A DNA stretch of 64,000 nucleotides from Podarcis vaucheri (taxonomy: Eukaryota): the NCBI GenBank assembly GCA_965113315.1, contig OZ220365.1. The stretch is one strand, 5' to 3'. Of the stretch, positions 2,640-64,000 are shown piece after piece; position 1 is the first letter of the stretch; each line of letters begins with the position of its first letter. The translations under genes and the position numbers were made by a program. Under the pieces are notes generated by a model. That model did no database searches, was not told the origin of the DNA, and saw nothing but the letters and a program-made list of their open reading frames with translations.

Positions 2640-2970
2640 CCTATTTAACAACTTAAAAGCCTAGGTGAACAACAATGCTTTGCCTAGCTTCTGAAAGTTG
2701 ACAATGACAATGCCAGATATGTTTCCCTAGAAAAAGCATTCTACAAATGGCAACAACACTGGACAAACCCATTCTTTTAAAATAATTTTTATTGAGTTTT
2801 GCTTTACATACATACACAGAAAAATTCTTGCCTTGCCACCTACCACACATCTTGTGGTAGGGGAGAGGTTGGGCACACAGAGAAGGACGTCTGATGGTAT
2901 TAGCAGGATCTGGGTAGGTTCCGATGGAGATGCAGTCCTTAAGATATCGGGGTCCCAAACTGACAACCAA
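2640..2970 (-). mobile_element. Degenerate L2-like 3' fragment
   Basis: AAAAGCCTAGG...CAGTCCTTAAGATATCGGGGTCCCAAACTG; boundaries approximate. Confidence 0.4.
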
Positions 2971-36892: not shown

Positions 36893-37210
36893 CGCGAGCT
36901 CAGCGAGAAGAGCCCGAAGGCTTCGCAAAACACAGCAGCAGCGGCGGCGGCGGCAGCGGCACTCAGGAAACTCGCGCGCTGCGGGCGCCCCCGTTTGACG
37001 TGCCGGCTTGCTGGCGCGTCGGATTTGCGTCACCCATGCCCCACCACGAAGGGGATTGGCTGAAGAGCCCTTTTTTTCTGTCGCGTCAGAAAGGCGGGAA
37101 GTTCCGTTATTTACGTATGGGAGAGAGCGGAGGGAGGAATCACGTGGTTAGTATGAAAAGCGTTTATTCGCGGGCGAGGACTCGAGAATATTTTTAAACG
37201 CCCGTTCTCT
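36570..37210 (-). promoter_or_regulatory. NUP133 CpG-island promoter with CRE-like, CCAAT, E2F/GC-box and E-box motifs
   Basis: CpG-rich. TGACGTG 36996-37002, TGCGTCA 37026-37032, ATTGG 37055-37059, GGCGGGAA 37093-37100, CACGTG 37141-37146. No TATA seen. Confidence 0.75.
36720..36892 (-). CDS. NUP133: NUP133 exon 1 (coding part)
   Basis: [10 protein letters not shown]...[19 protein letters not shown]; donor GTGAGT. Confidence 0.92.
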
Positions 37211-37441
37211 CAGTGATGTGCTTATCACTTTAAAAGTTTTATGCCCCACATCTTCCTTCTAAGACTTAAGTTTGCATGGCAAGTAGCAAGACAAATCAGA
37301 GGAATGTGGGTGCATTTAGCGGGTGGGGGTTGAAACGGGTAATTTAAATCTATTTTAGCATTTTAACTGGTGTATGTTTTAAAGTATAGTTGTGGACCCC
37401 CCCCCCTATTTTACTGTATTTATTTTACAATCAGAATTTAT

Positions 37442-37460
37442 TAAATAAATAAATAAATAA
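37442..37460. repeat. (TAAA)n microsatellite
   Basis: Direct reading. Confidence 0.85.
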
Positions 37461-39301
37461 GGAAAAGTTTAAAGATTGCAGAAGAGGGAAGACAAAAGAA
37501 TCAAGGAAGAAGGGGTGAAGAAAAGTTGGTGACTTAGAGAGAGGTAGCAGATTCACTCTAGAATAGCACTGTAAGGGCCTGTGCTAGTGCCTCTGTGTTA
37601 TCTTTCTAAAATAAAAACACTCTTAATTTGACATTCTGGATAGAATTACAAATTATGGAAGACATTGTGATGTTACCAAAAAAATGGCATTTCTCTATTG
37701 GGTTCACTCCCGTAGCGTGTTGTATCACATCCTGTACCCTGTAATGCCATAATGTTCTGGGTTTGCTTAATGGAAGAAAGTTAAGTGATGCGGAGCTGGG
37801 GTGGAGCCACACAAATCTTTGCCAGCCTCTTGGAAATGTGTAGTTCTACCCTGAGAGGAGGATATAAATAAGCAATAAAAATAATGATCCAAAAATGCAT
37901 GGTATCATTAAAAAGCAAGGTAAGTTACATAAAACCACAGCTCATGGTTTATCAATGAATTTTAATCCATAATAGAAAATATTACTGACAAGCAGATAGT
38001 GTTGAAAAATAAATATCAAAGAATGTAGAAAAAAGCTTTTTTTACTTGAAGTCAGGTATACAGAAGATAGACAAACATGTTTTAGACTCTAAACTGCCAA
38101 ATGCTTTACTTAATTATAAAACTGCTACATCCAGAGACCCCTGAATTACAGATAGTAATAGCTATATAGTTGTTTGCAATTGTAGGAGTTTGCGCTCTTG
38201 TACTCCATTGTTAAAACCTGCATGAAATGAACTTTGAAGTTACAAAACTAGTAAGCAACATCAAACAATGCACACTACTCCTAAGTTAGGGACATTTAGA
38301 AGTTGGTGTAGTCATTATGAAACATTGCAGCAGCCTATGTACAATAGCTTGTCATTTAGATCCCCCTGATTTCGAATATAGTAATAATAGTAAGATTTGC
38401 ACCCATAAAAAATAAATAATTTGTAGTTTGCCGATTTGAAATTGACATCATTATTCGCTCCTTGCAGTATTTCAATTTGTGAGAATTAATTGCTATTTAT
38501 ATGCCAATGTAGTAAAGACATTGTGAGACTTCTATATTGTCCTAATAAGCACTGTTGGATTTTATAGTGTTATTTGCAAACTGCAATATAAAATCATCTC
38601 AAGAACTCAAATACAGAAAAAGGTCACGGCTTGTCTCAGAGATACCTGTGCAAATGCATGTTATGTGAAGTACTTTGATCAATATGTATCCATGTTCAAA
38701 ATAACCATGGCTTCTAAATATGGTTTGATTTCCCCATTCCTTTCACATAGGGCAAAATGCTACATTATACATGAAATCGAGTTCTAGATCATCTCATTTT
38801 CCTCTTACAGACAGTAGGAGGCACTGTACGTTTGTACATACATGTGAAAAACTATTAGACAGGCACACACTGCTGTAGATGACAATCCCAACTACTGGGT
38901 TATAACAAATTAACCCACAGCAAGTGTGTGGTGCAGGCCCTGGAGAAGACACCACAAGTGCTGTTCTGAGGGAATAATGTTTCCGATAAAGCTGAATAAG
39001 GTGCAAAAATATATGGAGATAGAAACTTTTATAGGTGCTGAGCTAGTCCTGGGTGCCCTTCATTATCTCCCCTACCATGTCTGTTCCCAACATGGAAATG
39101 AAATGGCATCTGTTTAATATAGAAAGAGGACTTTTCGATTTTAAACTTGCTTTGTTCATATGTACAGTTCTGAGAGGATGAAGGAAGAAAATGGACTGAA
39201 TGAGGATACTAAGTAGCTGCATAGTTCTCAACTCTGAACCTTTCCTGCCTTGGACACTAGGTGACAATGAACTCATGTGATGACTTGACATCCATCTAAA
39301 T

Positions 39302-39628
39302 CAGTGGTCAGCAAACTTTTCCAGCAGGGGGCCAATCCACTGCCCCTTAGAACTTGTGGGGGGCCGGACTATATTTTTTTTTTGGGGGGGGGAATTAACG
39401 AATTCCTATGCCCCACAAATAACCCAGAGATGCATTTTAAATAAAAACACACATTCTACTCATGTAAAAACACCAGGCAGGCCCCACAAATGACCCAGAG
39501 ATGCATTTTAAGTAAAAGCACACATTCTACTCATGTAAAAACATGCTGATTCCCGGACCGTCTGTGGGGTGGATTTAGAAGGCGACTGGGCCAGATCCAG
39601 CCCCTGGGCCTTAGTTTGCCTACCCATG
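39302..39628. mobile_element. hAT MITE (Charlie-type) with an internal ~70-bp tandem duplication
   Basis: Perfect 8-bp TSD ATCTAAAT (39294-39301, 39629-39636); ends CAGTGGTCAGCAAACT / AGTTTGCCTACCCATG; second copy at 44388. Confidence 0.87.
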
Positions 39629-41730
39629 ATCTAAATCACCTTTCAGGTGAGACCAACAATTTGGTTCCCATAAGATTTTTTGAAACAAGCAAGACAATTC
39701 CTATGAAAAAGAAGCAAACCATTACTGTAGAATCAGTAAGAATGGGGACAGTATTTGGTATGAAAGCTGGACACAGAGCTCACTTATCAGCAGTTAAAAG
39801 AGAAGCATTGCAACATGGTAACCTGTAACATTAAATCCATGAGAAATTCTTGAAAAACTGTCCTGCTGTCATGTTACAGATGTATATGTTATGAAATGCT
39901 CTAACAATAATAAATCTCTCATTTTGAAGCTTTAAAATATTGTGTAGCTGATCAGAAAGGCAGCAGTTCCAAATACATTTACTTACAAGCTATTCTACAA
40001 AGCTGCAGTAGAATTCGCTTTCAATATTACGTAGAGCTTTGTCAAAGGCTCTTATATTAGACTAAAGGTTTGCTAAAAATGCTTCTTTTCAAAAGTTGAA
40101 ATATGCACCAATACATTAAGTTCCAAACCAAGAAGTGAGTTAACTGACAGTTCAATTATGTTTCACCAGTGTGTGATGTATACAATTTTATGTAATCTGA
40201 TAAAATTTGCAAAGTTAGAAAGAGGACTGTTTGCTAGTATTTTAATAATAAATACAGTTAAAAATCAAAGAAGTAAATTCCTATGCTTTTGTTTATTTTT
40301 TTGGTAGTTTTTAGAATGCATAGTATTATTAATTTTGTTCTCTTTACTCTGACAATCTAAGGCAGCAAGCCTAATCCCATTTACCTGGGAATAAGCCCCA
40401 TTGAATTCAATAAGGTTTACAACTGAGTAAATATAGTTTTCCTCATGAAAGTTTCCAATATTTAACACACACCTAAGCATAAACATGTTTGCTAAGTTAT
40501 ACCCATTTTATATTTCATGACATATTTCCAGTTTTGATTCAATATAATAGATGGTGGGTAATAGTAAAGTGGCTATGACTGCAACCCCATGCACAGTAAA
40601 CTTTTTATTTATTTATAGTTTTATTCTGTGTGACTTAAACATATATTTATAAACATATGAACAAATGAAGCTGCCTTATATGAAATGAGCCTACATTAAG
40701 ATACTTTTGAGCCAAGTGAATACTCTTCGCACCCCAGACTTTTTTGGTGCCAGGTGAATGCTTCCCTGCCCTGGACTATTTTGAATGTTTTTCTTTTTAT
40801 GGGGGTGGGGCACTTTGGAACAGATAATGTATACTGGGTTTTAAATGCTGCTTGTTCTGCTTTTTAAGCAAGTGACAGAATGATTTTTAGGGTGCAATCC
40901 TAAAGTGGAGAAGAGATTACAAAGGCAGTTTAAAATGTCATCCAGTGTCCTGTTGGCATCAGGACAGAATTGAAGACAGAGGAAGGTTCTTTATTCCTAA
41001 TCAGTTACTAGCCTCAGGATTTAATTAAAAAAAATTATCCAATTGGGAAGAGTGCAAGTTTTAGATACACCCAAGAACATGTCTAAATCACGTCAGCAGG
41101 GCAAATATTCTAAAAAAAAACACACCTGAACAGGTTAGGATGGAATTTCTGCCTTCCCATTTTGTTGGGCTTTTGACCCCTATCAGTTCTAGCCAGGATG
41201 ACCAATGGCTAGGGATGACAGGAGTTTTAGTCCAACAACATATGGAAAGCCACAAGTCCCCCATCTCTGTCATAGGTCTCTGTCTTCCAGCCCAACTAGT
41301 AGCAGCTTTTCTAAGATTCCCCCTTCAGCTTCCTGTGCTACATCTTATACTGTACCAGAGGGTTCTCCAACTCCCCGGAACAAATTTGGAGGATGCAAGG
41401 GTCAATGGTGGGAACAGGGGACTGGTGAAACTTTTCCTCTGCTCTGATCCACTTTGTTCAATGAATGGATCTCTGTTTCCAACACATAACTTTAAAAAAT
41501 TCAGAACTAAATGTCGTTTTAATTTCCAACAATGAAAAATCTGTGTGCTGCCATAACTTAAAACCAATGAACATCCATATGATAGTCATCAATCAAAATA
41601 CAAAGAAATTACAACCTGAAAACAGCTCAGTATTGGATATCTTCAGAATATAGTTAGTAGTTTTGAATAAAAAGTTTAGCACAATCAAGTTTTAAAATAT
41701 TTGAAACACGCTGAAAAAATATATATAACA

Positions 41731-41736
41731 TTTATT
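41731..41736 (-). terminator. Candidate proximal ABCB10 polyadenylation signal AATAAA
   Basis: TTTATT on the plus strand, ~85 nt past the stop; further signals exist downstream. Confidence 0.4.
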
Positions 41737-41821
41737 GTACATAAACTGAAACATAATTTAAAATTCTTGGAAATGTGATACATTTCGATACTCTTTCATA
41801 ATTTTAAAAAATATTTTTCTT

Positions 41822-42083
41822 TCAGGATTTCACATTTAATGCAAAACTTTCAGGAGTCTGGATAAAAGACTGTTTCTTCATTAGTTTGCTGAAAAGTCCA
41901 TCTGGGTTTGCAAGCAGTGTTTCGTGCTTTCCACACTCAATAATTCTACCTTGGTCAAGAACTGCAACAGAATTAGCATTCTGAATGGTGGACAGACGAT
42001 GAGCAATAATGAGGACAGTTCTCCCTTCCATGAGCCGATCTAGTGCTTCTTGGACAAGATATTCATTTTCAGCATCCAAAGCA
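41822..42083 (-). CDS. ABCB10: ABCB10 exon 13 (coding part)
   Basis: [36 protein letters not shown]...NVKS* (TGA). Confidence 0.94.
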
Positions 42084-45000
42084 CTAATTCAGGAATAGAT
42101 TGAAGGGAAAAGATGTGATAAATTCCCCTACTACACTCTGAGAGCTATTATTTTAGGGCAGACTAGTTGTCTAACCAGCTTGCTTTCATTTCATTTAAAA
42201 ATCTGCCACAAATACGCTTAAAATATTGTTATTTCACAAAGTCCACATTCTGTGGACGAAATAATACCCCATTATTTATTGGAAAAGATAATCTTAACCC
42301 ATTTTGTCTTCAGCAATACGCAGCACCTTTTGACAGATCAGTTCCCACTGAAATTTAATTAAACATGTTCATTTTTAATCAAATTTATTTTTAATCAAGT
42401 TTCAAAAGGCAAGGAGCACATCCGAATGGGAGCTTCCCAGTAGGAGAGAAGGAAGTGTCCCAGAAAGAAAGACAGCTCCTGTCATTGTATAAATGAGCAC
42501 AGCTTATCCTGCGCTGATTTTTGTGATCTCTTGGCCAGGACTTGCTGAAGTATTCCACAGATGTGGTCAGAAACTGTTGGGAACATCAAGTCACAGTTCC
42601 TTCCAAACTGCTTTGAAGAAAAATACATGGCCTGCTCTGGCATAAGGTGAGTAGTATAGAAGTATTAAAAGGTCAGTAGTAGAGAAGAAATGATCACTTC
42701 TGGGGAGGAATGTTTTACTTACCTTGTTGCTTCATCAAGAAGAAGAATTTTTGGATTCTACAGAACAAAATGAACTTGGTTTTACTTTGACAGTTTTTTT
42801 TAGTTGAAGGTTGCGTTAATGTACATACATTGGAAAAATAACTGGAACATTAGGGAGAATACTTAAGATCTCTCTTTCTCTATACAAGTGGAAAGCAACT
42901 ATGAGGTCACCTTTATTAACAATGAACTTTTCACTGGTTTCTGGTGGAATTGCTACATAAGCATAGATATGAAGCAGCTAAGTTTGCTGCTCCAATTACA
43001 TGAAGAATATATGGAAGAAGCAAACGCATTCAGAAGAGCAGCATGCCAATGTCATTCTATGCAAAAATTTGAAATTCCTTGGAGAGCTGACATAAACAAT
43101 ACATATTTACGTATAAGGATGAACTGGAGTAAACATGGTAGCTTTTAATATGCACCATTAGATTATTAAGATTCCTCTAAAGCACAATTGCAAAAATGGC
43201 AATGTATTAGTACTCAGTACTAAAACAACAAAAATGTTTTATCACATACTAGAAAAAAAAGATTCTGCTATAAAAGTCCTTTCCTCAAACTTTTTTTTAT
43301 TTTTATGTAGGGACTGGAGTTTGTATCTAACTAAATTAAGAGCTATTGCCAACAAACAGAAAGGCATTTTACATTATTCTAAAGTAACCTGCAAGCTAAC
43401 CCTCTTAAAGTGACAGATAGGTAGCCGTGTTGGTCTGCCATAGTCAAAATAAAAAAATTCCTTCCAGTAGCACCTTAAAGACCAACTAAGTTAGTTCTTG
43501 GTATGAGCTTTCGTGTGCATGCACACTTCTTCAGATACACTGAAACAGAAGTTGCCAGATCCTTCTATATAGAGAAAAGGTGGGGAGGGGTATTACTCAG
43601 AAGGGCGGTGGGAATGGGAGATTGGCAGATAGCTGAGTGAGCCTGTTGACGACTCTTAACGACTGCAATAGGTCTTACAGGAAAAGGCAATGGGTGAGAA
43701 GGTGAGAAATGGCTTAATTTCTGGCTTAATTTCTCACCTTCTCACCCCTTGCCTTTTCCTGTAAGACCTATTGCAGTCGTTAAGAGTCGTCAACAGGCTC
43801 ATCTCAGCTATCTGCCAATCTCCCATTCCCACTGCCCTTCTGAGTAATACCCCTCCCCACCTTCCCTCTTAAAGTGCTAAGCAAAGGTACTACACCTTTG
43901 ACACCTTAATCAAAATTACTACCTTCCCAGAGCAAAAATGTTGCTCCTGGAAGAGCAATCTATTCCAGACAAACCTGTAGAGCAGCGCCGGACAATTTGA
44001 CTCTATAGTAAGCATCATATAATTCCACAACTGTAACACATTTCCTATTCCTACTACCTCAGTTAAGAAAAGTCTATTTGACACATATGTTTTCGCTTGT
44101 TCTTCTTTCAAGATATGGATATGAGAAAAGCCAATTGGTTTCTGTCTTACCTTGAGAAGAGCTCGAGCAATTGCAATCCGTTGCTTCTGCCCACCTGTTA
44201 AAAAAATGTAACATTAAAATATATTTCTTTTTCTGTTTTTTTCTCTTTATGAAAATTCTTAGTTAAACGCAGGAGGATTAATTGCTCTCCACTAATTCTG
44301 CAAGAAGAACTACATTTTAAAGCTTTCCAGCGGAGTAGCTGTATGAGTGAGTTGCAGCAAAAACAACAGTCTTGTGACACCTTAGAGCAGGGGTCAGCAA
44401 ACTTTTTTAGCACTGTCCCTCAGACCTTGTGGGGGGGGTCAGACTATATTTTGAAGGGGGGGAATGAACGAATTCCTATGCCCCACAAATAACCCAGAGA
44501 TGCATTTTAAATAAAAGCACACATTCTACTCATGTAAAAACATGCTGATTCCCGGGACCATCCTTGGGCCGGATTTAGAAGGCGATTGGGCCAGATCCGG
44601 CTCTCGGGCCTTAGGTTGCCTACTCATGCTTTAGAGCACTGGAGGCCAAACTTGGCCCTCCAGCTGTTTTGGGACTACAATTCCCATCATCCCTGACCAC
44701 CGGTCCTGTTAGCTAGGGATGATGGGAGTTGTAGTTCCAAAACAGCTGGAGGGCCAAGTTTGGCCATCATTGCCTGGCTTAGAGATTGACAAATTTATAA
44801 AAGCCTAGGTTTTGGGGACTAGGGTTCACTTCATCATTTAATGTAAGTGAATCGTAGAATCACAGAGTTGGACGGGACCCTGAGGATCATCCAGTCCAAC
44901 CCCCTGCCAAGCAGAAACATGCAGCTGTCCTTTAAGGGGACTGAACCTGCAACCTTGGCATTATCAGCACTATGCTCTAACCAGCTAAGCTAGCCTGCTA

Positions 45001-48000
45001 TAATAATAATTTATTTCTTTGTTTATAATATAGTGCTATTCTACGTTGCAGGTTGGATAAAGGGAGATTTGTAAACAGTCAGGTCAGAGAGAAATAGAAT
45101 GTGTAAAGTACAGACAGTGGCCTGGTTTGTCACGCTAAGCCAAATTATCAGTCAGTGCAAATGTGTAAGCGTGTGGACCCATGGAGAGGAGATCATGGCC
45201 TCTTTGCTCCTCCCTGGGATATTAACAAAATGAAAATTATATTTTAAAAGCACATATATTACACAATGCATTTTGAAAAGTTCAAAGTCATACCTGAAAG
45301 AAGAACACCTTTCTCCCCCACTAACGTGTGGAATCCATTTGGAAAGTTTTGGATAAAACTAGCAGCATTTGCTATCTCAGCAACTCTCTCAATTTCTTCA
45401 GTAGTTACTGTAGAAGGGTCCTCTGCACCATAGGCAATGTTTTCAGCAATAGAGCATGAGAAAAGAACTGGTTCCTAACGTGTAAAATATAACATTAGTA
45501 TATGAGGGTTTTTTTAATATCCGAAGTCTTAATATTTCCTACCAATTGCAGTGGTTAAACATTTTGTACAGCAGTGGATCTATTCCCTCTATAGGAATAT
45601 AGAAGGAAGTATTCCTATATTCCATAGTAATACAGAAGGAAGTGTTCTCAAACTTTTGTCCAAAGCTTCGAATGGAGCATTGCAATAAGAATCTTCCTTT
45701 CACAAGGAGTGCAAGAATTAAGATAAATATACAAAGAATCAGTGCTTCTCTTCTTACCTGACTTACTGTTCCGATTCTATTCCTGAACCAGAGTGGATTT
45801 AACTGACGAACATCAACACCATCGACAGTGATGCTTCCTTGAACAAGAGATGGTTGTTAGATAATATTCTAGGAACAGAGGGAGAAATAGGAGGCTCAGG
45901 AGAATGAGAAATAATAGCAGAGGGAATGCATAAGTGCCACAGAGGTTACTGTATGCATGGCCTTCTTGGCAATTGTATCCTGACTGGAACTGTCACCTAC
46001 TAAAATCACAATTATTTGCCTATGCTTTGGAAGACTTGGATAAGGTTGCTCTGGATCTTAATAACTTGTAATAGTCTGAAGACCCAGGAGGCCGCCACCT
46101 TGCTGAAGCAAAGCAAACTCTGCACATTGTGAACAGGAGACCAGCATTTTTGCATTCTATTCTGAATGCAAAACCACATCCAACACAATTGCTGACCTAG
46201 TACACCCTCATTCTTACCTGAGATTGGATCATAAAGCCTTAGCAGGAGAGAGACAACAGTCGATTTGCCAGAGCCACTTGGGCCGACCAATGCCATCACA
46301 GAGCCCGATGGGATGCTAAGGGTAAAGTCCTGAAAAACCAATGCTTCTGGACGAGCTGGATATGCAAACTGGATATTTCTGAACTCCAGAGCACCTTTGA
46401 AAGCATCCTGGTTTAATACCATTCCCTCTAAAAAAAATTAAAAATTAAAATTGCAGTAATATAAACACATTTATGACAGAAGAGGAACCCAAAATTTGTC
46501 CAAGTAAGATGCATCTATGTGCATTACATTCAGTCGTGCCATCAAAAAAATAAAAATAAGGGGCACAGGTTATCTACTGTGATTCTTCTTAGAGGTCTAC
46601 AGATTTGCTCATTTTAAAATGTTATCTATAAGGCAACCTGGACCAGTCTGATCAGAGGAATTGGGCATGAGCCTCAGCTGTGTTCTTTCTGGGAATTAAG
46701 TACCTTAGCATTTGCACATTCTGAAAATCCCCAGTGGCTTATTCTGCTTATGGCCTAGCTGGACTAGGTAGTTATTCCCACTTTCTCCCAAGGGAATAGC
46801 AGCACCAATAGCAGCACCAAAGACAGAGAATGGGTCACACAATAGGAACAGAAGAGCTGGGCTGATATGTTTGGTTCATTCTTCTCATATATTTGGAGGG
46901 ATGAGAGACAATATACACATAAGGCATGGGTGGGGAAAATGCCTTCAAATTTTGTATGTGGGTGGCTTCCCTTACTATAAACACAACATAGCTAAGGATT
47001 TTCTGTTTTTTTACCTTTTTGAAAAGGGTCTCACTGATCACAGTTGGCAAGACTTTTGCATGTTTTCCTATAGTATATCCTCTTCCCATCTGTGCCAGAT
47101 CCCTATGGAAACACATAGTGTTGTTTCTATGGGGATGTGGCACAGGCAGGAAGAGAAAACATGGCTAGAAAATTTAGGAGTTTTGCAGGCTGCAGTCAGA
47201 AGCCAGTAAGGCTTTTTTTTAAAGTGTGAAACACAGAAGACAAATCACAGAGTAAGGAAAACTCACACATATTAATACATTTGCAGGAATTGCTCTTGCC
47301 TCTCCCTGAAAGCAACTGAAAACCCACCCTTTTTTAGAGGTGGGGTTCAAATAGCTCTGAAAAAATGTGGAGGGGATTTCAGTCCCCCACTAAATGGAAC
47401 AAACACACCAAGGAGCATACAGAGTCAGGCTAGAGGTAATCAGCAACATCCCTGGGGAAGTCACAGAATTATAGAGTTGCAAGAGACCCGCGGGTCATCT
47501 ATATATATGCCTGAAAACCAGCCCTGATGGGAACTTCAGCTGTAAGATGGTGTTCCAGGTTAGAGAGCTCACACCACAGCTTAAACATTTATGAAACAGA
47601 GAACCTACCATTAAAAGGAAGTTGTGGCTTTCGATCCATAAGTTCCCACAGACGCCCTCCTGCACCTAATCCTTTCATAAGCTCAGAATAGAAAGAGCTT
47701 AAACCTAAACAAGAAAAAGTATTGTTATGTACAAACAGGAACATGTAGGACAGGTAGTTTGTCTTGAAATAGAGTGGCCTAACCTCCATGCCTAAATCCT
47801 TATTCTAACTGCTTCATGGCTGCTCAGCCTGAAAAACAAGTTTTGCATGTTTGACAGAATAAACTCTGCCAACCTGCTTCTAAACAGGAGATTTTAAATA
47901 GCTAGCATGTACAGTACACTTAAATAAAATTGAAATCTTAAGACTAGGGTGTTTTTGGCAGAGAGCAGTCATTCTGCGAGGGCACTACCTTTCCCTGTCT

Positions 48001-51000
48001 TTTGAATATGGTACACCAGCACTGGAAAACTATTTTTTCATTTTAAGTAAAGTATACTTTAAAGAATACTTTAAAGGACTTTTCAAAAGAATCACCCTGC
48101 TGGATCAGGCCGAGCGTCCATCTAGCAGGACGTGAGAGCAATTCTTGCTATTCCCCAACAGTTGGTGTTTCGTAACATACTCTGTCTGATCATGGAGGTT
48201 GCATATAGTTAACATGACTAGTAGTCCTTGACAGACACATTCTCCATGGATTTGTCTCAACTGGTGGCCATCACCATGTTTTGTGGCAGCAAAATTCCAT
48301 AAATTACTTGTGTGTTATGGAAATAAGTGCTTTCCTTTGTCTTTCTTGAATTTCCTGCCAATAAGTTCCATTGGATAACCCCAAGTTCTGGTATGGTGAG
48401 GGATAAACACTATTCTTTACCCACTTCCTTAACACCATGAATGATTTTATAAACATTTATCATGTCTCTACTTCTAAACTGAAACTTGCTTATAATATTT
48501 CTAACTCATTATTTTTAAGCATATATTTTATGATCCATACCTCCAATGCTTATGCCAACCCAGAAGGCGTACATTAAGAAAGAAGACAGTTCACCAATGG
48601 TCATGTGGGCACTGCCCATCAGTAATCCTCCTTTGTACAGAACAGAGAGCACAATCAAATTCCCAGATAGCCCAGTCTGAAAAAGAAAAAGTAACGTATC
48701 TTCCAAGATAATCCAAACCTTCATAGCGGCATCTTCTAAAATTCTCTCATGTTTGAGAACATTTATCTAAAATCTTAAAGTAATTTATTGTATGGGGGGG
48801 AAGCATCTACGGTACCCATATTGCCAAAATTAAAAAAGTGAAGACATAAATTCTTTCATCACATTCTTCTAAGAGAATCAATTGGACACACAACATTCAG
48901 TACAACATTCAGTACATGAAGTCTATTACATTTGGAGTGCATCTTTAGGAATGCAACTATTATCTTCAGTACTTGCAAACTTTTCAGAAGGTCTCCAAAG
49001 AAAGCCAAATAAATATTAACTTTGAACCAAAGGAGCCCCTGTGCTGGCAGAAGGCACTTCCATTCATGCAAAGGATTCCCTGCCCCCCCCCCCGTTGCAG
49101 TCCTAGGTCTATTCTTCTTGAGGTTGTTGGGACCTGTTGCAGGAAGAGTTTGGTGAGACCACAGATCAGTGGCAGAGCATCTACCTTGCACAGAAAAGGT
49201 CCAACATGTCTCCTGACAAGCCTCAGAAAAGCTCCTGCCTGAAATCCTGGAGAGCTGCTGCCAGTCAGTGCAGGAAGCACAGAGTTAGATGGACCAATTG
49301 TCTGGCTCATAAGGCAGCTTCTTATGATCCAATCCACTGCCTGCTCTACCCACCCTGGGTATCTTATCAGATATGAAAACATAACCCATGTAAATTTTCT
49401 TAGGAAATTTACTTAGGAAATACTGCATATCTGTAGTCCCTGTTTACATTACACGAACAAGGAAGCTCACGACAGGCAGAAAGGTAGTTTAAAGGGGAAA
49501 TGCTGCCATACTCATGCAGTATATATCCTGAATTTCCACTGAATGAGCTCTGATATCCACTCTCCCCCCACCAATGTTCCTATTAAAATCAGGATAGATT
49601 GGAAATTCTCTGGAGCAGTTAGTGGCCGAGGTCTCCAAAAAGTGCCTTGGTCACAGTTACTGCTAACAAGGAAAGCTTCTGTAAACAGAACAACAAAACA
49701 AAGAAAGTGATACATGGCCTGAGGTGCAACTCCCAGCTAAATGTGCAAATAATTTTCTGTAACGGTGTTGTGATATGCTATTTACAAATGGAAAATCCAA
49801 GAATGAAGGTGCCTATATCAAAGTAGCAGTATAAATATTCAAGAGAAACCCAGAGACATTACAGAAACATTGTGGATTCCTCACCTTCTTCATATACTTA
49901 CTGCTCCAAAGAATCCTGCTCGAGCTAACGCTTCCTTTTTGGCTAACTGTAACACATGGTCAACCTTGCTCCTGTATTTCTCCATTTCTTTCAATTCTTG
50001 CCCAAAAGCTCGAACTGTTCTCAAATTTCCAATCCGTTCTTCTGCTAACTGCAGTTAACATTTAAAATATATATATAAACCAGGAGGCTTGAATTTCAAG
50101 TGCCCCAAACCAAAATAATAGTAAATGTGATCCCTCTAATTCCGTGGTTCCCAACATGAGCTACATGCCCCACAGGGGGGCAATTTGATTTTTAATGGGG
50201 GGGGGGCAATTCAATAATGAGTTATTAACAGTGAATGGCCTTTTAGACTTTCTCCACATGAATAGAAGTTCACTTTTTGAATAGTAAGAATTCTATGTCA
50301 TGGGGGCGGGGGTGCATCAGGATTTTAGAGATGCTTAGGTGGGGCATGGCCAAAAAAAGGTTGGGAACCATTGCTCTAATTGCTTTTAAGTACTAGACTA
50401 AGGTACTAGACGTATGCTAGAAGTATTTCACATGTGATGCCATGGTTTAAAAGACATGCCTGAACTTTTGCCTCTTTGTGTTCCTGTGTAAAAGGGAGCT
50501 GGAACATGATCTAAGGCTAAGCCCCAGTACCACATGGGGCTGGGAGGAAAAGCACTGTAGCACAGGCCACAGAGGGCAGTTATACAATGGCCTAGTTCAT
50601 ATTAAGCTGTAGTTTAAAATAGGTTAACAAGAACAAGCAGTGAGCTGATGCCCCCTGCTCAATAGTGTCTGCTTTGCTCCTCCCTGCTTCTGTCTTTGCC
50701 ATCCCACAAAGGAAGCAAACCAGAGGCTGGTTTTGCATTATGTGTGAACCAGCACTGATAGTTTCTCTCCAAACAAGCCACAAGTATAGGTGTCAAATGA
50801 GCCAAGCAGGCACTACTGAGCAGTATCCACCAGCATGCTGCTTGTTCTTATTAAGCCATCCTTTATTTTCAACTATAGTTTAACATGGCATCTGAAACAG
50901 GCCAACAACACAAGCTCAGTGCAGATCCACCCACACAAAATGTTGATGCAGGCTTTCATTTTCTTAACCTTGTTGTTACGAGGCAATATACACAAACCCT

Positions 51001-56960: not shown

Positions 56961-59544
56961 CCTTATTCAGTTCTTCCTCAGTTCAGTACTTAAGGCTGGC
57001 AAGTCACAGAAATTTAATTGCCATTTTGACAATCCATTTTTATCCATGTTTATTGGGAAGCAAGGTATGCAGAGGATTGCAGCCCTCAGAGTACAAGAGC
57101 CTCCTGTCAAAGGATGAAATGGGCATCTGGGCCTACTTCCGAACCTAAAACCTTGGGCAGGTTTCACCAATCTGGTCCCCTCCAGATGTTTTGGACTACA
57201 GTACAACTCCTCAGTTCCAGCCAGCCCTTAGGCAATTTAAAAGATGGAAATCAATTAAAGAGAAGCATACAGCAGGCTCAAGTTAACCTTCATGCCCTGA
57301 TTTTGTGAACTTTTCAGAAACATCTGTCTAGTTACTGTTAGAAACAGGATGCTAACTAAATGGCCGCTCTGTTCAAGACAGCTGGGCTGTCATATTTTGA
57401 AGATTTTATACAGCCTCTGCTAGCCCCTCCTTTCTAAAACTCCCAGTCTTCTCTGATCTCTACCAGCAAGTTCCCAGAACAAACATTTCTAAGGCTATGT
57501 CTTGGTGCTATTAGGATAAGAAAGGATTTCCAGTGTATAAACTGGGTTCATTGTAGCGAAGACAATCATTAATTTTCAAAGACAAATAGAGAACCACAGA
57601 GCCTAACTTTATATAAAAATAAAAAAATTGCATTCCTTGCATGCACCATTATTTATTTCTGATAAATACTAGTGTTAAGCAGCATTGTCCATTTTTTTGT
57701 GGGGGGAGGCAGAAGGCATGATTATTTCAAAACACTGCAGCAAAGGTGCACTTCTAATCCTGCCTGTTTTCTATGAATTTTATATATGTTCCTCTGTATG
57801 CCTGCACCACTCTCATTCCATGCATGGAAAATTCATTCAACTAGAATCAGGAAACAGAAATGCTCTCAGAGCCTTTACCCCTTGTTAGTGCATTTTTGTG
57901 TGTGCTTTCCCCCTTTGGAAGAGTAAGATGCAGCCAACTGATAATTCAAATAAAGAAATCACAACCCTGTTGAAGCTGGAAATGGGAGGTCTTAATTCAA
58001 AGCATCTGGACAGGAAGGGACAAACAAAAAATCTGGCACATTTCCCTTTTCTTTCTGAAATATTGCCAATATCATAGTAATAAAGAGTAAGGCCTGTGGA
58101 AGAAAGCACTAGATTAGGCTCCACTGATTAAAAATCCCCCGCCAGTCTATTATAATTGAGATATATCTTTGAATACAATTCTAGCAGTTTTTCCCTTCTG
58201 TGGTTTTAAGGATATTTTCTGGACTCTGTAAATTATTTCAATATGCTGTTTGTCTTCTGAGCATATATAGAGTTTTACTCCAAGGAGAACAGGTCTTTCA
58301 AAACAGAGGTCCTACTGACATGCTCCTTTGTGAAGAGAATCATGTAGCAACAACCAGTGCTTTTTTTCTAAAAAAATGTTTAGGGGTACTCTCATTTTGA
58401 CTCAAGAAAACCACCATTTTATAGTTCAGATCAGGAAACATAAATACAGTAAATGGACAAAAGTACAAAGATTCACAAAATGTTTAGGGGTGTGCGTACC
58501 CCTGCATTCCCTCAGGAAAAAGCACTGGCAACACCCCATTTATGAAGCCCATCAGGGGGCTACTCAGTTGTGTCCATCATTTTTTAAAAGGGGTGTTAAA
58601 AAACACTTTATCCTGTAAATTTGCTTTGCTGCATCAGAATTTAAATGTGCCAACAAATCACTGTCATAATCTTCCATCTTAAGAGTAGTGCCAAAATTAT
58701 GTTTGGACATAAGACATGTTCAAGCATGATGCCCCCATGCCAATAATAGCCAATGTGGGTAGAGATGAAGGAACTAGAGGTTTGCATGCCACAAGGGGTC
58801 ACCCTTGACAGAGTCTTGCTTCCAAAGCAAACAAAGCAGGTATCTTCAACCTTTTCGGATCCACGACCCACTTGAAACCCATATATTTGTACAGTGGTAG
58901 GGCCCCAGTTGCAACCCACCTTAGGTCAAGCTGCAACCCACTAATGTGTTCTGACCCACCAGATGAAGACCAGTGTCATAGAGGACATTTTCCTGAAGGT
59001 GAATGTATGCTTTGGGAAGCCAGGAAGATTGTTGTTATGGCCTGGCTTGGCTTTCGTATTATCAGGGGTAACAGCACATACTGTCATTCTGAAAGCACAG
59101 TTGCATAACTCAGTATGCAACATGCATAATAAATCAAGCCCTATAAAAGCACATTTGCAATTAACAGCTTGACTCTCTGTTTTGGGGTGTGTGTTGCACC
59201 TTCTAATCAGGAAAACTAGATAGCGAAGACTTGGCAGTGGCTGTAAAATTATGGTTGGCTAATAACTCTACTTTCAATCTACTGTAAGGACACCAACACC
59301 TCCCCCATATTGCAATTAAAAATTCTAGTGTTTTTTTTAAAAAATAAAAACTCTACAATAAATTAAAACAGATTATGCAAAGATGCATGACTTACATACT
59401 ATTGAATGGAGTTTGGTCCCAAGGCTTGGTTGTTGTAAATTGGTACGAAGGTAATAAAATTGTGCAACTGTCAACCTATGCCAGCTACAACAGCAGATTT
59501 TGCAAGGCGTTAACTTGTGTATGTATAAAGCATAGTACGTTATA

Positions 59545-59754
59545 CAGTGGTACCTCGGGTTAAGTACTTAATTCGTTCCAGAGGTCCGTACTTAACCTGA
59601 AACTGTTCTTAACCTGAAGCACCACTTTAGCTGCCGCCGCGCCACCAAAGCGCGATTTCTGTTCTCATCCTGAAGCAAAGTTCCTAACCTGAAGCACTAT
59701 TTCTGGGTTAGCGGAGTCTGTAACCTGAAGCGTATGTAACCCAAGGTACCACTG
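59545..59754. mobile_element. Tigger/pogo-like MITE (same family as 17491)
   Basis: TA-CAGTGGTACCTC...AAGGTACCACTG-TA; reverse complement of the 17491 copy. Confidence 0.88.
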
Positions 59755-60231
59755 TACAGATTTAAGAACAGTTATAAAGCCCCTTAGCTTAGAATTGCTT
59801 TCTTCTTTTGCTTGAAAGTCTTAGGTAGACCACAAATTGTTCAGCACCTGAAAATGCCAGGTGTTTTCCTAATGGATCAACCAATACATAATTTTTTACA
59901 TGTGATAACTAAAAGGGAAAGGAAATCAATTTCCTACCTACAAAGCCTATTGAAAAATGCTTACCTTGCTCCACAAATCTTCGCATGCAACCAAGGGATA
60001 TGCATGAAGAACTCTATTCAAAACAGGTGATCAGCATGACGGGAAATCATAATAGGCATAGAGACTTGGCTTAAACATTTCTTATCAGTATAAATATGTT
60101 CAACCTCAACTACTGAAGAGTTTCTGTACCTGGAGGGCTATTAGTTGGTGAGTAAGCTGACAGCCATTCCTACTATGTGTGGCTTCTATCCAAAAACATT
60201 TTTTTAATTGCAGCTGAAGAGTGGTCTGGTG

Positions 60232-60939
60232 CAGTGGCGTAGCGTGGGGGGTGCAGGGGGGGCCCGCCGCACCGGGCGCAACATCTGGGGGTTAGGGTTA
60301 GGGGGCGCAAATCCACGGGTTAGGGGGCGCAAATTACTTGCCTTGCCCCGGGTGCTGACAACCCACGCTACGCCACTGGTCGAAGCAGCCTCTTGTCAGG
60401 GAGAGGGCGAGCTCATTCCCCTCAGAGATAGAAACGAGGCAATTGTGGGGGGGGGGTTTGGGGGATGAAGCGCCTTTCGAAGCCGCCGTGAGGTAACTTT
60501 GGGCGCTCGAGTGGACGAGGGTGCTGCTTGTTCGCCCCAAAGAGGTCTTTTCCCTTCAGGCTCGGCGGCCTCTCCCTCCCTTGGGAGACAGGGAAGGAGG
60601 CTGGCGGTGTGTGGGAACCTTCCAGGTTAGAGTTGTGCTGTGTGTTGTCCAGGGGGAACGGGGCTGCGTTTGGGAACCACCTGGGCACGAAGCCGTTTCG
60701 CCAGGCTCCGGGTTGTTTCGTGGCACAGGACAAAGTTAAAGCCCCAAAGCAGGAGGGGGGGGGTTGACCGGTGTTTTTTTGGGGGGGAGCTGAGCAGTGG
60801 CGTAGCGTGGGGGTGCAGGGGGGGCCGGCCGCACCGGGCGCAACATCTGGGGTTAGGGTTAGGGGGCGCAAATCCACGGGTTAGGGGGCGCAAATTACTT
60901 GCCTTGCCCCGGGTGCTGACAACCCACGCTACGCCACTG
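60232..60939. mobile_element. Composite hAT unit: MITE - 416-bp cargo - MITE
   Basis: Direct copies at 60232-60378 and 60795-60939, each with 17-bp terminal inverted repeats (TIRs) CAGTGGCGTAGCGTGGG/CCCACGCTACGCCACTG. The 8-bp TSD GTCTGGTG occurs only outside the whole unit (60224-60231, 60940-60947). Confidence 0.85.
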
Positions 60940-61345
60940 GTCTGGTGGGACAGACTCTGGCAGAGATAATTTATGCATTTAATGACACCATCACACAGGA
61001 GTTCCGTAATAGTACAGTTTTAAAGCTTGGCTCAGTACAAGCAATGTGACATCCAATACAATGGCAGCCATTTTATGTGCCTTTAAAAAAAATAGTATTA
61101 GCAACCCAGTTGCAACGGGGTCAAATTAGGCCCTAAATAGTTTGAGAATGTTTTCTCCAAGAAACAGAACATGAAGCTCAATATCCAAAAAAGGTATATC
61201 TTGAATGTGACGAACATATAATAATTGTGTGTGAGAGAGAGGTGGGTGAGGAAGAAAATACATTATTTTTCCGTGTATAAGATGCCCCCCTAACTACCCA
61301 GAGCGACAATGCCCCTGTGACTCAGGACAAATAGAAATGGTAGAG

Positions 61346-61479
61346 CAGGCATAGGCAACCTTGGCCCTCCAGATGTTTTGGGACTACAACTCCCATGACC
61401 CCGTTAACAGGACCAGTGGTCAGGGATGATGGGAATTGTAGTCTCAAACCATCTGGAGGGCCGAGTTTGCCTATGCCTG
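61346..61479. mobile_element. Palindromic hAT MITE (same family as 44637)
   Basis: CAGGCATAGGCAA...TTGCCTATGCCTG; flanks TGGTAGAG/CAATAGAG. Confidence 0.8.
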
Positions 61480-62690
61480 CAATAGAGCATGTCCTTCTCC
61501 AGTGCCTGCGTTACAGAGACATTCGTATTATCCTGATTTCCCCACTACTTCGTAAGTACCCAGGGCACACAGGGCAATCCTATACCTCCCTGCTGCTCTC
61601 AGATACCAGTCTTGCTAGAACATATGATGTTGCACAGTAGCGCTCAGAATTTGTCGGAGGATGACCTGTGCCACAAACCAGATTTAATGAACATATCAGA
61701 ATGTTCTGTAGATTGTCTTTTATATATCAACCTTTTATGCTCCTCCACACCCACCCAATGCTCCTATTCCTTCTTTTAGACTCTTAAATTCTTAAGAGAT
61801 TTTTATATTTACCTTCTGTTTTAATACCTTTTAGCTTTCCAAAACGCTTTTCAGATTTTAAATGACTGTATTCCACCCTTTTATGCTGGTCTATGACCGT
61901 AATACAGATTTGTATTGTACTGAAAATATTTTAACTTAATTTGGAAATGTCACAAACAGTAGTCTAACTGATGAGGGAGGGCATTGCTGAAGATGGCCTC
62001 CCTCCCCTTTCTGTTGACAAAAGCCTCCTGTTAGAGAAGCAGCAGTTGGATACAACCGAGTAACTTTTGCATGATCCCTTCTATTAGAAGTTAGGAATAA
62101 TGTGATGCAATTTATATTGTTGTTTCTTTTCTTAAAGCCAGCAACCAAAGAAATTATTTTTAAAACGTTAGTAGTAGTAGCGGCTTGCAAGATTTGAATC
62201 GGCTTGCTTCTCAGTGCCAAACAGGAAATCAAAGACCAACATACTGCTAACCAACCTTACTGTTAAGAGCTGGGTGAGCTGCTGTGGTTGAGACCTGGGT
62301 AATTTTTATCCCTGCTATGGCACTCTGACCTCCCCATTCCATGTGCCACGAAAAGGAAGACTGCTCCCCATACCAAGTGGGGTGGGTGTGCCTGGAAATA
62401 GAGGGGCCACAGCTTGGATTAGGCCTGGGTGTTTGCCCACCACCAAGTTTAAAGGTTGTGTTATATCAGGTTTCCACTTCTGGTTTCCCCCCACATTTTA
62501 ACAGTAAGCATCCCCCCCCCCGCCCTGTGGCACTGCAATTGTAAATTCTTGTAAACTGCCCTGAGTAGGGCAGAGGCACTAGAAAGGTGGCACATAAATG
62601 TTTATATAAGAAAATACAATAAATGTAGACCATTTGATCAAAATTTGATTTTGAACAGAAACACTCTAGGCTGAAATTTTAACTCAAGTA

Positions 62691-63343
62691 CCGTATTTTT
62701 CGTCCCATAGGATGCTCCGTCCATAGGACGCACCTAGCTTTTTTGGGGGAAACTAAAGGAATTTCCCCCCCCTTTATTTCCCCCCCAAAAGCAGGTCAGG
62801 GAAACTGAACCAGGTCGAGGAACAGCGGGATGGTGGCGCTGCGCCTCCCTGCTGTCCCCCGAGCTTGTGGGGCTGGCTGATGTCTGCCCGGTGCGAGGGG
62901 CGCTCTGCTTCAGGGCGCCCCGCCCGCCGGGCAGCAGGCTGCTATCCGCAGCGTGGGGAGCCCTGCGGGGAACTCCCGCAGGGCTGCCTAGGCTGCGGAG
63001 GTGTTCCCGAAGCGCCAGGCGCTCTGCTTTCAGGGTGCCCGACGCTCCGGGAAGCAGGCTGCGGATGTGTTCCCGAAGCGCCAGGCGCTCTGCTTTCAGG
63101 GCGCCCGGCGCTCCGGGAAGCAGGCTACTATCCGCAGCCTAGACAGCCCTGCGGGAACTCCCGCAGGGCTGCCTAGGCTGCGGATGTCTTCCTGAAGCCT
63201 GGAGAGCGAGAGGGGTCGGTGCGCACCGACCCCTCTCGCTCTCCAAGCTTCAGCAAAGCCTGCATCCGCCTCATAGGACGCACCCAGATTTCCCCTTCAT
63301 TTTTGGAGGGAAAAAAGTGCGTCCTATAGGGTGAAAAATATGG
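62691..63343. mobile_element. Tc1/mariner(pogo)-type MITE with internal GC-rich tandem repeats
   Basis: TA-CCGTATTTTTCG...TGAAAAATATGG-TA; left part nearly identical to 34708-34885. Confidence 0.85.
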
Positions 63344-64000
63344 TACCTATTTTTTTGGTGTCCACTGAGAACTTGGTTTTAACATTCTAAGAAAGGGAAC
63401 TGAATGTCTGGCTCTAACACATTCATGTGTTCAGAGTAGCACTTACCTGCTATTTAAATTATGCTTCAGCCTGTAGACAGACACTGCTTCTGTAAAAACC
63501 CAGGGGACTGAGAACATCAGTATCATGCACCTGCAGGAGAGCTCACCTGCCTGGCTCATGCAGCAGACAGGTGCAACCCACAAGGTAAAAACTTTTTATC
63601 TGTTTATAGAAGTCTATTCAGTTCCACACAGAGATACTAAACCTCTTTAAACTAAATGCTTTAATAGAAAAAAACAAAAATACAAAATCTCTTTCCGGAA
63701 AGCAGAAATATTCAGTCTTCTTAGAATGACAAAATTTAAGAGTATGCTTTCTCCAACCCCAGGTTTTGCATGCTCACACACTTGTATGAAAACTTCATGA
63801 AACAACTTAATAGTTCAGTAATCAGTGGAAAACATTGGAAGTTGGCAAAGCTGCATCTTCTCACAATTAATAATTTAGTAATACTATTTTTTTCACATCG
63901 TCTGCACACCTTTGCCCATATTTATCTGCAGAAAGTATTTTTGGTGAGGTGAAATGTGTCCCTTTCTATTAGGAGTCCAAACATGCTACTATAAAGTCAG

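What the first reader, a model, noticed from the sequence alone, without database searches (positions are those of the whole stretch)
60224..60947. Apparent composite transposon in a vertebrate: two hAT MITEs moving a 416-bp cargo as one unit
Seen: two direct-orientation copies of a MITE (147 bp at 60232-60378; 145 bp at 60795-60939), each with perfect 17-bp TIRs, differing only by two G-run indels and one substitution. A perfect 8-bp duplication GTCTGGTG brackets the whole 708-bp unit. The inner flanks (GTCGAAGC after copy 1, GAGCTGAG before copy 2) match neither each other nor the TSD. Established: hAT transposases make 8-bp TSDs and can pair the outer ends of two neighbouring elements (as in maize Ac/Ds macrotransposition, analogous to bacterial IS composite transposons). 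Inference: the outer ends were used in one transposition event that carried unrelated DNA to a site ~4.6 kb upstream of the ABCB10 promoter. That would be a MITE-pair route for duplicating host DNA.
Basis: partly seen in the sequence, partly recalled or inferred. Interest (0 to 1): 0.82.

Follow-up and report, generated by a model that had tools for sequence, protein, structure and literature searches.

The report
Two lizard MITEs carrying host DNA
A 708-base insert in a wall-lizard genome, made of two complete copies of a very abundant cut-and-paste mini-transposon around 416 bases of ordinary host DNA, is absent as one clean block from three related genomes, so it probably jumped in as a single unit, which is well documented in maize and bacteria; I found no vertebrate report in the paper library I could search.

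Summary
Two complete MITEs lie in direct orientation (147 bp at 60232-60378, 145 bp at 60795-60939). Each has perfect 17-bp terminal inverted repeats. They flank 416 bp of GC-rich DNA, and one perfect 8-bp duplication, GTCTGGTG, brackets the whole unit. Neither MITE has a duplication of its own.

Public contigs added three things:
- **Empty site.** Another individual with the same species label and two other species each have a contig that skips exactly 716 bp (708 + 8). This is the empty site with a single GTCTGGTG.
- **Cargo is host DNA.** In those genomes the cargo exists elsewhere at about single-copy depth. In one 1.6-kb contig it has no MITE on either side.
- **Two source MITEs.** The MITE family sums to roughly 35,000-50,000 copy-equivalents. 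The only substitution between the two copies is a family-wide variant, so they descend from different family members.

Best reading (about 0.6): one hAT macrotransposition that used the outer ends of a MITE pair, as in maize Ac/Ds and Tam3L.

Not excluded: cargo capture by gap filling into a tandem MITE dimer, or a two-step origin at this site. The donor locus in the source genome was not seen. Earlier notes from this scan, unchecked here, describe cargo-carrying hAT elements elsewhere in this genome.

The parts
60224..60231 (.). Left copy of the 8-bp target-site duplication GTCTGGTG
   Evidence: Relatives have only one copy at the empty site.
60232..60378 (+). MITE copy 1 (147 bp), complete. 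It has 17-bp perfect TIRs at 60232-60248 and 60362-60378, and carries the minority family variant C at 60265.
   Evidence: table 3 shows 74-85% of family depth carries G at this position.
60379..60794 (.). 416-bp cargo: GC-rich (61%), CpG o/e 0.62, no ORF of note. It is host DNA present at about single-copy depth elsewhere in related genomes.
   Evidence: In one search, records 20 (X3), 27 (X8) and 13/14 (X10) align to the cargo only, starting exactly at 60379, and in X3 ending exactly at 60794.
60795..60939 (+). MITE copy 2 (145 bp), complete. It has 17-bp perfect TIRs at 60795-60811 and 60923-60939, and carries the majority family variant G at the site equivalent to 60265.
60940..60947 (.). 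Right copy of the 8-bp target-site duplication GTCTGGTG

Best explanation
The 708-bp block is a young composite transposon (macrotransposon). Two members of a very abundant hAT-type MITE family stood in direct orientation on either side of 416 bp of ordinary host DNA at another locus. A hAT transposase supplied in trans paired the left end of one MITE with the right end of the other. It cut out or copied the whole MITE-cargo-MITE segment and inserted it about 4.4-4.9 kb upstream of the ABCB10-like gene, making one 8-bp duplication (GTCTGGTG). Shown: the structure, the single outer TSD, the lack of a TSD for either MITE alone, the clean empty site in relatives, the host origin of the cargo, and that the two MITEs are different family variants. 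Inferred: that the outer ends were used in one transposition, and that the MITEs flanked the cargo at its native locus beforehand.
For: (1) Structure and TSD logic. Both MITEs are complete to the last base of their inner TIRs. The outer flanks are identical over 8 bp, while each MITE alone matches at only 3 of 8.
(2) Empty site. Single contigs in X8 (same species label, another sample), X3 and X10 (two other species) run from 60221 straight to 60938. They skip 716 bp with more than 130 nt on each side and sit at full single-copy depth. One search shows this equals one copy of GTCTGGTG. No solo-MITE or cargo-only form of the site was seen.
(3) Cargo origin. In X3 a 1604-nt contig aligns to 60379-60794 exactly (14 mismatches, 5 gaps) and continues 948 and 241 nt on either side with sequence unlike the MITE. 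Depth there is 0.5-0.7 times the flank depth, consistent with a single-copy locus.
(4) Different source MITEs (table 3). At 60265, the only substitution between the two MITEs, 74-85% of family depth in all four genomes has G. The remainder amounts to about 2,500-3,700 copy-equivalents.
(5) Opportunity. Summed family depth is roughly 35,000-50,000 times single copy, with some bins higher. That predicts several hundred chance MITE pairs within 500 bp.
(6) Hint of a second MITE-joined copy in the source run. Contig 60460-60819 crosses the cargo/MITE2 boundary unbroken at depth 53.3 against flanks of 38. Two variants feed into it upstream: a window-like one at 30.7 and one with the relatives' letters at 28.4 + 11.
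(7) Precedent. The same diagnostics define hAT macrotransposons in maize (10.1101/082677; PMC9910405).
Against: The donor locus in the source genome was not seen, so the prediction that GTCGAAGC flanks one MITE and GAGCTGAG flanks the other there is untested. The depth and continuity argument rests on summed contig depths, which the tool itself warns are not copy numbers. The 3 nt after MITE1 (GTC) equal the first 3 nt of the outer TSD; this could be microhomology from a repair event rather than chance (1/64, or less surprising if the family prefers such targets). One contig private to the source run joins 60380 to 60791 at about single-copy depth. It reads as a MITE pair without the cargo and is not predicted by this model. 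The MITE1/cargo junction was not among the listed contig pieces. No long reads were examined.
Confidence: 0.6

Rival explanations
1. Dimer plus gap filling. The progenitor was a tandem pair of MITEs a few bases apart. A break between them, for example from transposase cutting an inner end, was repaired by copying about 410-416 bp from an ectopic host locus, using GT and TGAG microhomology. The filled dimer then transposed here through its outer ends, or the filling happened here after the dimer had landed.
For: table 5 lists a contig found only in the source run, at depth 34.4 (about single copy), that joins 60380 to 60791. It reads MITE end + GT .. TGAG + MITE start. I estimate a few percent probability of this arising by chance, given the roughly 10-15 MITE-to-MITE joints listed. 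Gap filling with short microhomology is the published origin of most animal Pack-TIRs (PMC8277862). Unchecked notes of this scan describe cargo-carrying hAT elements elsewhere in this genome.
Against: The joint is flagged 'between: not known' and its shorter side is only 23 nt, so the spacer length is uncertain. A MITE-free native donor in the source genome should break contig 60460-60819 at 60794, and it does not (record 6). By depth the dimer contig is not an allele of this site (30.7 + 34.4 is about 1.7 times the flank depth). Filler landing exactly between two intact inner TIRs needs a targeted break.
Confidence: 0.15
2. Two steps at this site. A single MITE inserted first and made the GTCTGGTG duplication. 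Later a break at or in that MITE was repaired from another template, either by strand-annealing synthesis with template switching or by ectopic conversion from a MITE-flanked or MITE-adjacent copy of the cargo. That repair added the cargo and the second MITE without transposition of the unit.
For: GTC directly after MITE1 equals the start of the outer TSD, as expected if synthesis ran 3 nt into the right flank before switching template. Abortive gap repair with filler DNA is established for Ac/Ds (my own knowledge) and for animal TIR elements (PMC8277862). The contig data cannot order events within the lineage.
Against: It needs two events on a short branch, since relatives about 2% diverged all have the empty site and no solo-MITE form. 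The two MITEs carry different family-wide variants at 60265, so the second is not a copy of the first. Both inner ends are exact transposon termini, which repair does not predict. Homology of 147 bp or less is short for ectopic conversion.
Confidence: 0.15
3. Assembly artefact. A single MITE insertion at this site was wrongly joined to a cargo-plus-MITE sequence from elsewhere because the MITE is highly repeated.
For: The family has on the order of 10^4 copies. The listed short-read contigs cover the junctions separately and none spans the whole unit.
Against: Three junctions are reproduced without a difference in contigs of the probable source run (records 1, 6, 8). The unit is only 708 bp, far below long-read length. 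The outer TSD and the matching empty site fit a real insertion.
Confidence: 0.04
4. Two independent MITE insertions on either side of DNA that was always at this locus.
For: None beyond the high copy number of the family.
Against: The orthologous site in three genomes lacks the cargo as well as both MITEs, and the cargo homolog lies on other contigs. Neither MITE has its own TSD.
Confidence: 0.01

Closest known systems
hAT macrotransposons of maize (Ac/Ds pairs; the Tam3L pair that made the White Cap locus)
   Same: Two complete hAT-type elements in direct orientation flank host DNA. Each element lacks its own 8-bp TSD and the outer ends share one. The host segment is duplicated at a new site (10.1101/082677; PMC9910405).
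   Different: Here the flanking elements are 145-147-bp MITEs rather than kilobase elements. The cargo is 0.4 kb rather than 10-28 kb. The host is a vertebrate. The donor locus has not been seen, and transposition is inferred rather than observed genetically.
Animal Pack-TIR elements (Tan et al. 2021, PMC8277862)
   Same: Host DNA is carried between the ends of a non-autonomous TIR transposon, and hAT is the commonest superfamily. Multicopy cases also lack an orthologous TE in outgroups.
   Different: Pack-TIRs have the insert inside one element, mostly formed by gap filling into an old resident TE that is still present in outgroups. Here there are two whole elements with four intact ends, and the site is empty in relatives.
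Bacterial composite transposons bounded by MITEs (TIME-COMPs, MITE-flanked integrons)
   Same: Two copies of a non-autonomous miniature element bracket unrelated DNA and are moved as one unit by a transposase supplied in trans, with one TSD outside (abstracts of PMC13367494 and PMC3934969).
   Different: The transposase families are different (Tn3/IS versus hAT), the hosts are prokaryotic, and the cargo there consists of genes under selection.
Engineered 'sandwich' Sleeping Beauty vector
   Same: Two complete transposons flank a cargo, and only the outermost ends are used (PMC4229213).
   Different: It is artificial and of the Tc1/mariner type. The elements are head to head and the inner ends are mutated. 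Here the copies are direct and all four ends look intact.

Membership tests
hAT superfamily, non-autonomous (MITE) | 8-bp target-site duplication | tested here: met
   GTCTGGTG lies on both sides of the unit and occurs once at the empty site. A related 161-bp element sharing the terminal 33 nt has a perfect 8-bp TSD, TGTGACTT, in metagenome contig L002.
hAT superfamily, non-autonomous (MITE) | Short TIRs beginning 5'-YARNG | tested here: met
   The TIR starts CAGTG. Anolis hAT families begin CAGTGG, CAGGGG or CAGAG (PMC3014272).
hAT superfamily, non-autonomous (MITE) | An autonomous partner with matching ends that encodes a hAT transposase | not tested
   None is in the window, and no genome-wide search of this lizard was possible with the tools.
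hAT superfamily, non-autonomous (MITE) | Target consensus nTnnnnAn | tested here: inconclusive
   GTCTGGTG has T at position 2 but not A at position 7. One site cannot test a preference.
Composite transposon / macrotransposon | Two complete elements flank non-element DNA, with the outer ends in the correct relative orientation | tested here: met
Composite transposon / macrotransposon | One TSD outside the pair and none around either element alone | tested here: met
   outer flanks match 8 of 8, and each MITE alone matches 3 of 8.
Composite transposon / macrotransposon | An empty target site exists that lacks the whole unit | tested here: met
   records 9, 17 and 23, in three genomes.
Composite transposon / macrotransposon | A donor locus where each element has its own TSD, or more copies of the unit with other TSDs | tested here: inconclusive
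   There are only indirect signs in the source run: an unbroken cargo-to-MITE2 contig at 1.4 times flank depth and two upstream variants. Relatives show the cargo without MITEs.
Pack-TIR formed by gap filling | The same TE without the insert is present at the orthologous site of outgroups | tested here: not met
   The orthologous site is empty in X8, X3 and X10.
Pack-TIR formed by gap filling | Microhomology at the cargo breakpoints | tested here: inconclusive
   There is a 3-nt GTC match at the left junction and a 1-nt match at the right. GT and TGAG would be the microhomologies if the source-run joint 60380 to 60791 is the progenitor.

The most novel reading that the evidence does not exclude
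MITE pairs are a regular, still active route by which this wall-lizard hAT family picks up and spreads host DNA. Closely spaced MITEs mobilise what lies between them. Later loss of the inner ends turns such composites into the 'three-ended' and then ordinary two-ended cargo-carrying (Pack-TIR-like) elements that other readers noted in this genome. That would give a simple transposition-only origin for multicopy Pack-type elements in a vertebrate.
Probability: 0.2. Interest if true: 0.8.

Novelty: new variant of a known kind. Interest (0 to 1): 0.6.

Why it matters
Movement of host DNA between two cut-and-paste elements is textbook for bacteria and is genetically proven for maize hAT elements. 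My text searches of the held paper library found no natural vertebrate case; that is weak evidence of absence. Here the event is young: it is missing from another individual with the same species label and from two sister species. The family has on the order of 10^4 copies, so many more such pairs should exist. This makes two things testable in one set of closely related genomes. The first is how often MITE pairs duplicate promoters or other host segments. The second is whether composite transposition, rather than repair-based capture, seeds the cargo-carrying hAT elements reported in animals. It also implies hAT transposase activity in the recent past of this lizard lineage.

Tried and rejected
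- **Rfam scan of 59000-62000.** Nothing in the unit. The only hits were weak, sub-threshold miRNA-family hits on the neighbouring palindromic repeat.
- **Coding check of the cargo.** No meaningful ORF. A word-index protein search with the longest cargo frame, meant to reach Logan contigs of the donor locus, found nothing.
- **Earlier-findings look-up by sequence.** Blank.
- **Viral-contig scan for the MITE end.** No match. The metagenome scan gave only a distant relative of the MITE, not lizard DNA, so it could not provide a TSD census or the donor locus.
- **Full-text search for the TIR string.** Only unrelated primer matches.
- **Copy-number reading of the cargo in the source run.** I tried to derive this from contig depths around the G-run at 60442-60451. 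Extra short G-rich contigs inflate the depth there, also in X8, so I use only the three contigs that span 60436.
- **Cargo as the interior of a longer hAT element.** Rejected, because in relatives it is about single copy and, in the one contig that extends past both its ends (X3), has no element ends beside it.
- **Two independent insertions.** Rejected by the empty site.
- **ABCB10 exons.** Only one exon was searched, by reference.

Full report
**What is in the sequence**

- A 147-bp element lies at 60232-60378 and a 145-bp element at 60795-60939, in direct orientation.
- Each ends in the perfect 17-bp inverted repeat CAGTGGCGTAGCGTGGG. The motif occurs four times in the window, all here, against 0.02 expected by chance.
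- The copies differ by one substitution (60265, C versus G) and two single-base G-run indels.
- GTCTGGTG stands at 60224-60231 and again at 60940-60947. The chance of such a match at fixed positions is 1.5e-5.
- The inner flanks, GTCGAAGC and GAGCTGAG, each match the outer octamer at only 3 of 8 positions, so neither element has a duplication of its own.
- The first three bases after copy 1 (GTC) equal the start of the outer duplication.
- The 708-bp block is a sharp island of 60-64% GC in flanks of 36-41% GC.
- The 416-bp middle is 61% GC with CpG o/e 0.62. It has no convincing reading frame and no Rfam match.
- Neither the element nor the middle occurs elsewhere in the 64-kb window.

**Genomic setting**

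An ABC half-transporter gene lies on the minus strand. The exon at 46216-46437 matches ABCB10 over its whole length (E 2e-32). A likely first exon with an ATG at 55274 sits in a CpG island at 54.7-55.8 kb. A second CpG island lies at 62.7-63.4 kb. I searched one exon by reference only and did not build a joined protein.

**Evidence from other genomes**

The run search returned the probable source sample (X1 and X2, organism A). It also returned a different sample with the same species label (X8) and several other species. I laid the contigs of X1, X8, X3 (organism B) and X10 (organism E) on 59800-61400 at 88% likeness. Four results matter.

1. **Empty site.** In X8, X3 and X10 a single contig runs from 60221 directly to 60938 with adjacent contig coordinates (records 23, 17, 9). 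Each has 131-423 nt on either side and sits at the same depth as the flanks. The gap is 716 bp, which is 708 + 8. The ten bases TGGTCTGGTG occur on both sides, so this join equals 60231 joined to 60948, an empty site with one GTCTGGTG. No contig of these genomes shows a solo element or the middle alone at this site. The flanks differ from the window by 1.8-2.2%. The insertion is therefore younger than that divergence, and it is absent from another individual carrying the same species label.

2. **The middle is host DNA from elsewhere.** In X3 a 1604-nt contig aligns to 60379-60794 exactly (14 mismatches, 5 gaps). It continues for 948 and 241 nt with sequence that does not match the element, not even its 17-bp ends (record 20). 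X8 and X10 have corresponding contigs that start exactly at 60379 (records 27, 13, 14). Depth there is 0.5-0.7 of the flank depth, so the locus is single copy with some GC bias.

3. **The element family is very large.** Summed contig depth over the element is roughly 35,000-50,000 times the single-copy depth in all four genomes, and higher in some bins. The tool warns that this is not a copy number, so I take it only as an order of magnitude. At such density several hundred pairs within 500 bp are expected by chance alone.

4. **The two copies come from different family members.** At 60265, the one substitution between the copies, 74-85% of family depth carries G (the state of copy 2). The remainder is worth about 2,500-3,700 single-copy equivalents in every genome. 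The difference is therefore an old family polymorphism, not a new mutation.

**What the source run adds**

Contigs of X1 reproduce three junctions without a difference: flank to copy 1 (record 1), middle to copy 2 (record 6, 60460-60819) and copy 2 to flank (record 8). The copy 1 to middle junction was not among the listed pieces.

Record 6 has depth 53.3 against 38 for the flanks, and it is not broken at 60794. Upstream of it two variants exist. One is identical to the window (depth 30.7). The other carries the letters seen in all relatives at 60436 and 60459 (depth 28.4 plus 11).

At the positions further right where all relatives differ from the window, X1 shows no alternative letter. The simplest reading is a second copy of the middle in the source genome that also runs into an element at the same boundary. 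That would be the donor or a sibling copy. This rests on summed depths and on how the contigs were built, so I treat it as a hint only.

**An observation that does not fit neatly**

One contig found only in X1, at depth 34.4, joins 60380 to 60791 (table 5). It reads as an element end, GT, then TGAG and an element start, which is an element pair without the middle.

The tool marks the letters between as unknown, and the shorter side is only 23 nt. Given roughly 10-15 element-to-element joints in the listing, I estimate a few percent for such a match by chance.

The contig could be a progenitor dimer whose spacer was filled by repair synthesis with GT and TGAG microhomology. It could also be a deletion derivative of a sibling copy, or a coincidence. 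By depth it is not an allele of this site.

**Mechanism**

The best-supported account is a hAT macrotransposition. A transposase acting in trans paired the left end of one element with the right end of the other and moved the whole segment, making one 8-bp duplication.

The diagnostics are the ones used for maize. In the White Cap locus, intact Tam3L elements lack their own 8-bp duplication, while the outermost junctions share one (10.1101/082677). Ac macrotransposons excise and reinsert as units (PMC9910405).

Supporting this account:
- the two exact inner termini;
- the different family variants of the two copies;
- the empty site in three relatives;
- the host origin of the middle.

The main alternatives are these:
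- **Gap filling into a tandem dimer.** This is the repair-based origin that Tan et al. propose for most animal Pack-TIRs (PMC8277862). Their hallmark for that route, the same element without the insert in outgroups, is not met here.
- **A two-step origin at this site.** A solo element would have inserted first, followed by template switching or ectopic conversion. This needs two events on a short branch, and it does not predict intact inner ends or two different family variants.
- **Two independent insertions around resident DNA.** This is excluded by the empty site.
- **An assembly artefact.** This is unlikely for a 708-bp structure with three junctions confirmed, but it was not tested with long reads.

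**Family assignment**

The 8-bp duplication and a TIR starting CAGTG fit hAT. Anolis hAT families start CAGTGG or CAGGGG and also make 8-bp duplications (PMC3014272).

A scan of JGI metagenome contigs for the 22-nt end found three contigs from an unidentified eukaryote. They carry a 161-bp element that shares the last 33 nt at 91-94% identity and has a similar left end. One of these elements is bracketed by a perfect 8-bp TGTGACTT.

No autonomous partner was examined, so membership rests on these two features.

**Comparison and novelty**

The kind of event is known: bacterial composite transposons, including ones bounded by miniature elements, and maize hAT macrotransposons. The engineered Sleeping Beauty sandwich vector is a functional analogue.

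Four things are new here: the vertebrate host, the miniature size of the flanking elements, the youth of the event, and the very large family that should offer many more such pairs. My full-text searches found no natural vertebrate or animal case of two miniature elements moving host DNA. That is a weak negative.

Other first-stage notes on this genome, unchecked by me, describe hAT elements with interchangeable GC-rich cargo, a 'three-ended' element, and captured RANBP9 gene starts. If those belong to the same family, composite transposition followed by loss of the inner ends could be their source. I give that about one chance in five.

**Verdict**

The composite-transposition mechanism is the best explanation at about 0.6. 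The donor locus and population genotypes are the missing decisive evidence.

Noticed in passing
window 60289-60334 (and 60850-60895): The MITE interior holds three telomere-like GGGTTAGGG motifs and an 18-nt direct subrepeat (GGGTTAGGGGGCGCAAAT, 22 nt apart). In all four genomes some family members carry an extra 33-nt unit (joint 'goes back 33'). With about 10^4 copies, the family scatters G-rich telomere-like motifs across the genome.
   Followed up: partly
L001:511-671, L002:957-1117, L003:3440-3472 (JGI metagenome contigs Ga0056131 and Ga0209681): A 161-bp MITE in an unidentified AT-rich eukaryote shares the last 33 nt (91-94% identity) and the left TIR with the lizard MITE, but not the interior. 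L002 has a perfect 8-bp TSD, TGTGACTT. L002 and L003 are the same locus on opposite strands. This could be an old shared hAT lineage or horizontal transfer.
   Followed up: partly
window 61345-61480: A palindromic repeat (58-nt arms, 88% complementary, 20-nt loop) with an extremely high summed contig depth, higher than the MITE's. It gives weak, sub-threshold Rfam hits to mir-5408 and mir-3552 on both strands. Several contigs in all genomes join a MITE end directly to this repeat.
   Followed up: no
window 59543-59756: Another short element with 25-nt inverted ends starting TACAGTGGTACC, and internal 17-19-nt tandem-like subrepeats (AACCTGAAGC motif). It is probably a Tc1/mariner-type MITE.
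   Followed up: no
window 60380 / 60791 (source run only): One contig private to the source run joins 2 nt after MITE1 to 4 nt before MITE2 at about single-copy depth. It reads as a cargo-less MITE pair that may be the progenitor or a derivative of the unit.
   Followed up: partly
window 62701-63401: A second CpG island lies 1.8 kb beyond the unit and has an internal direct repeat, visible as repeated peptide motifs in ORFs 62865-63176. It is presumably the promoter of the neighbouring gene, so the unit lies between two CpG-island promoters.
   Followed up: no
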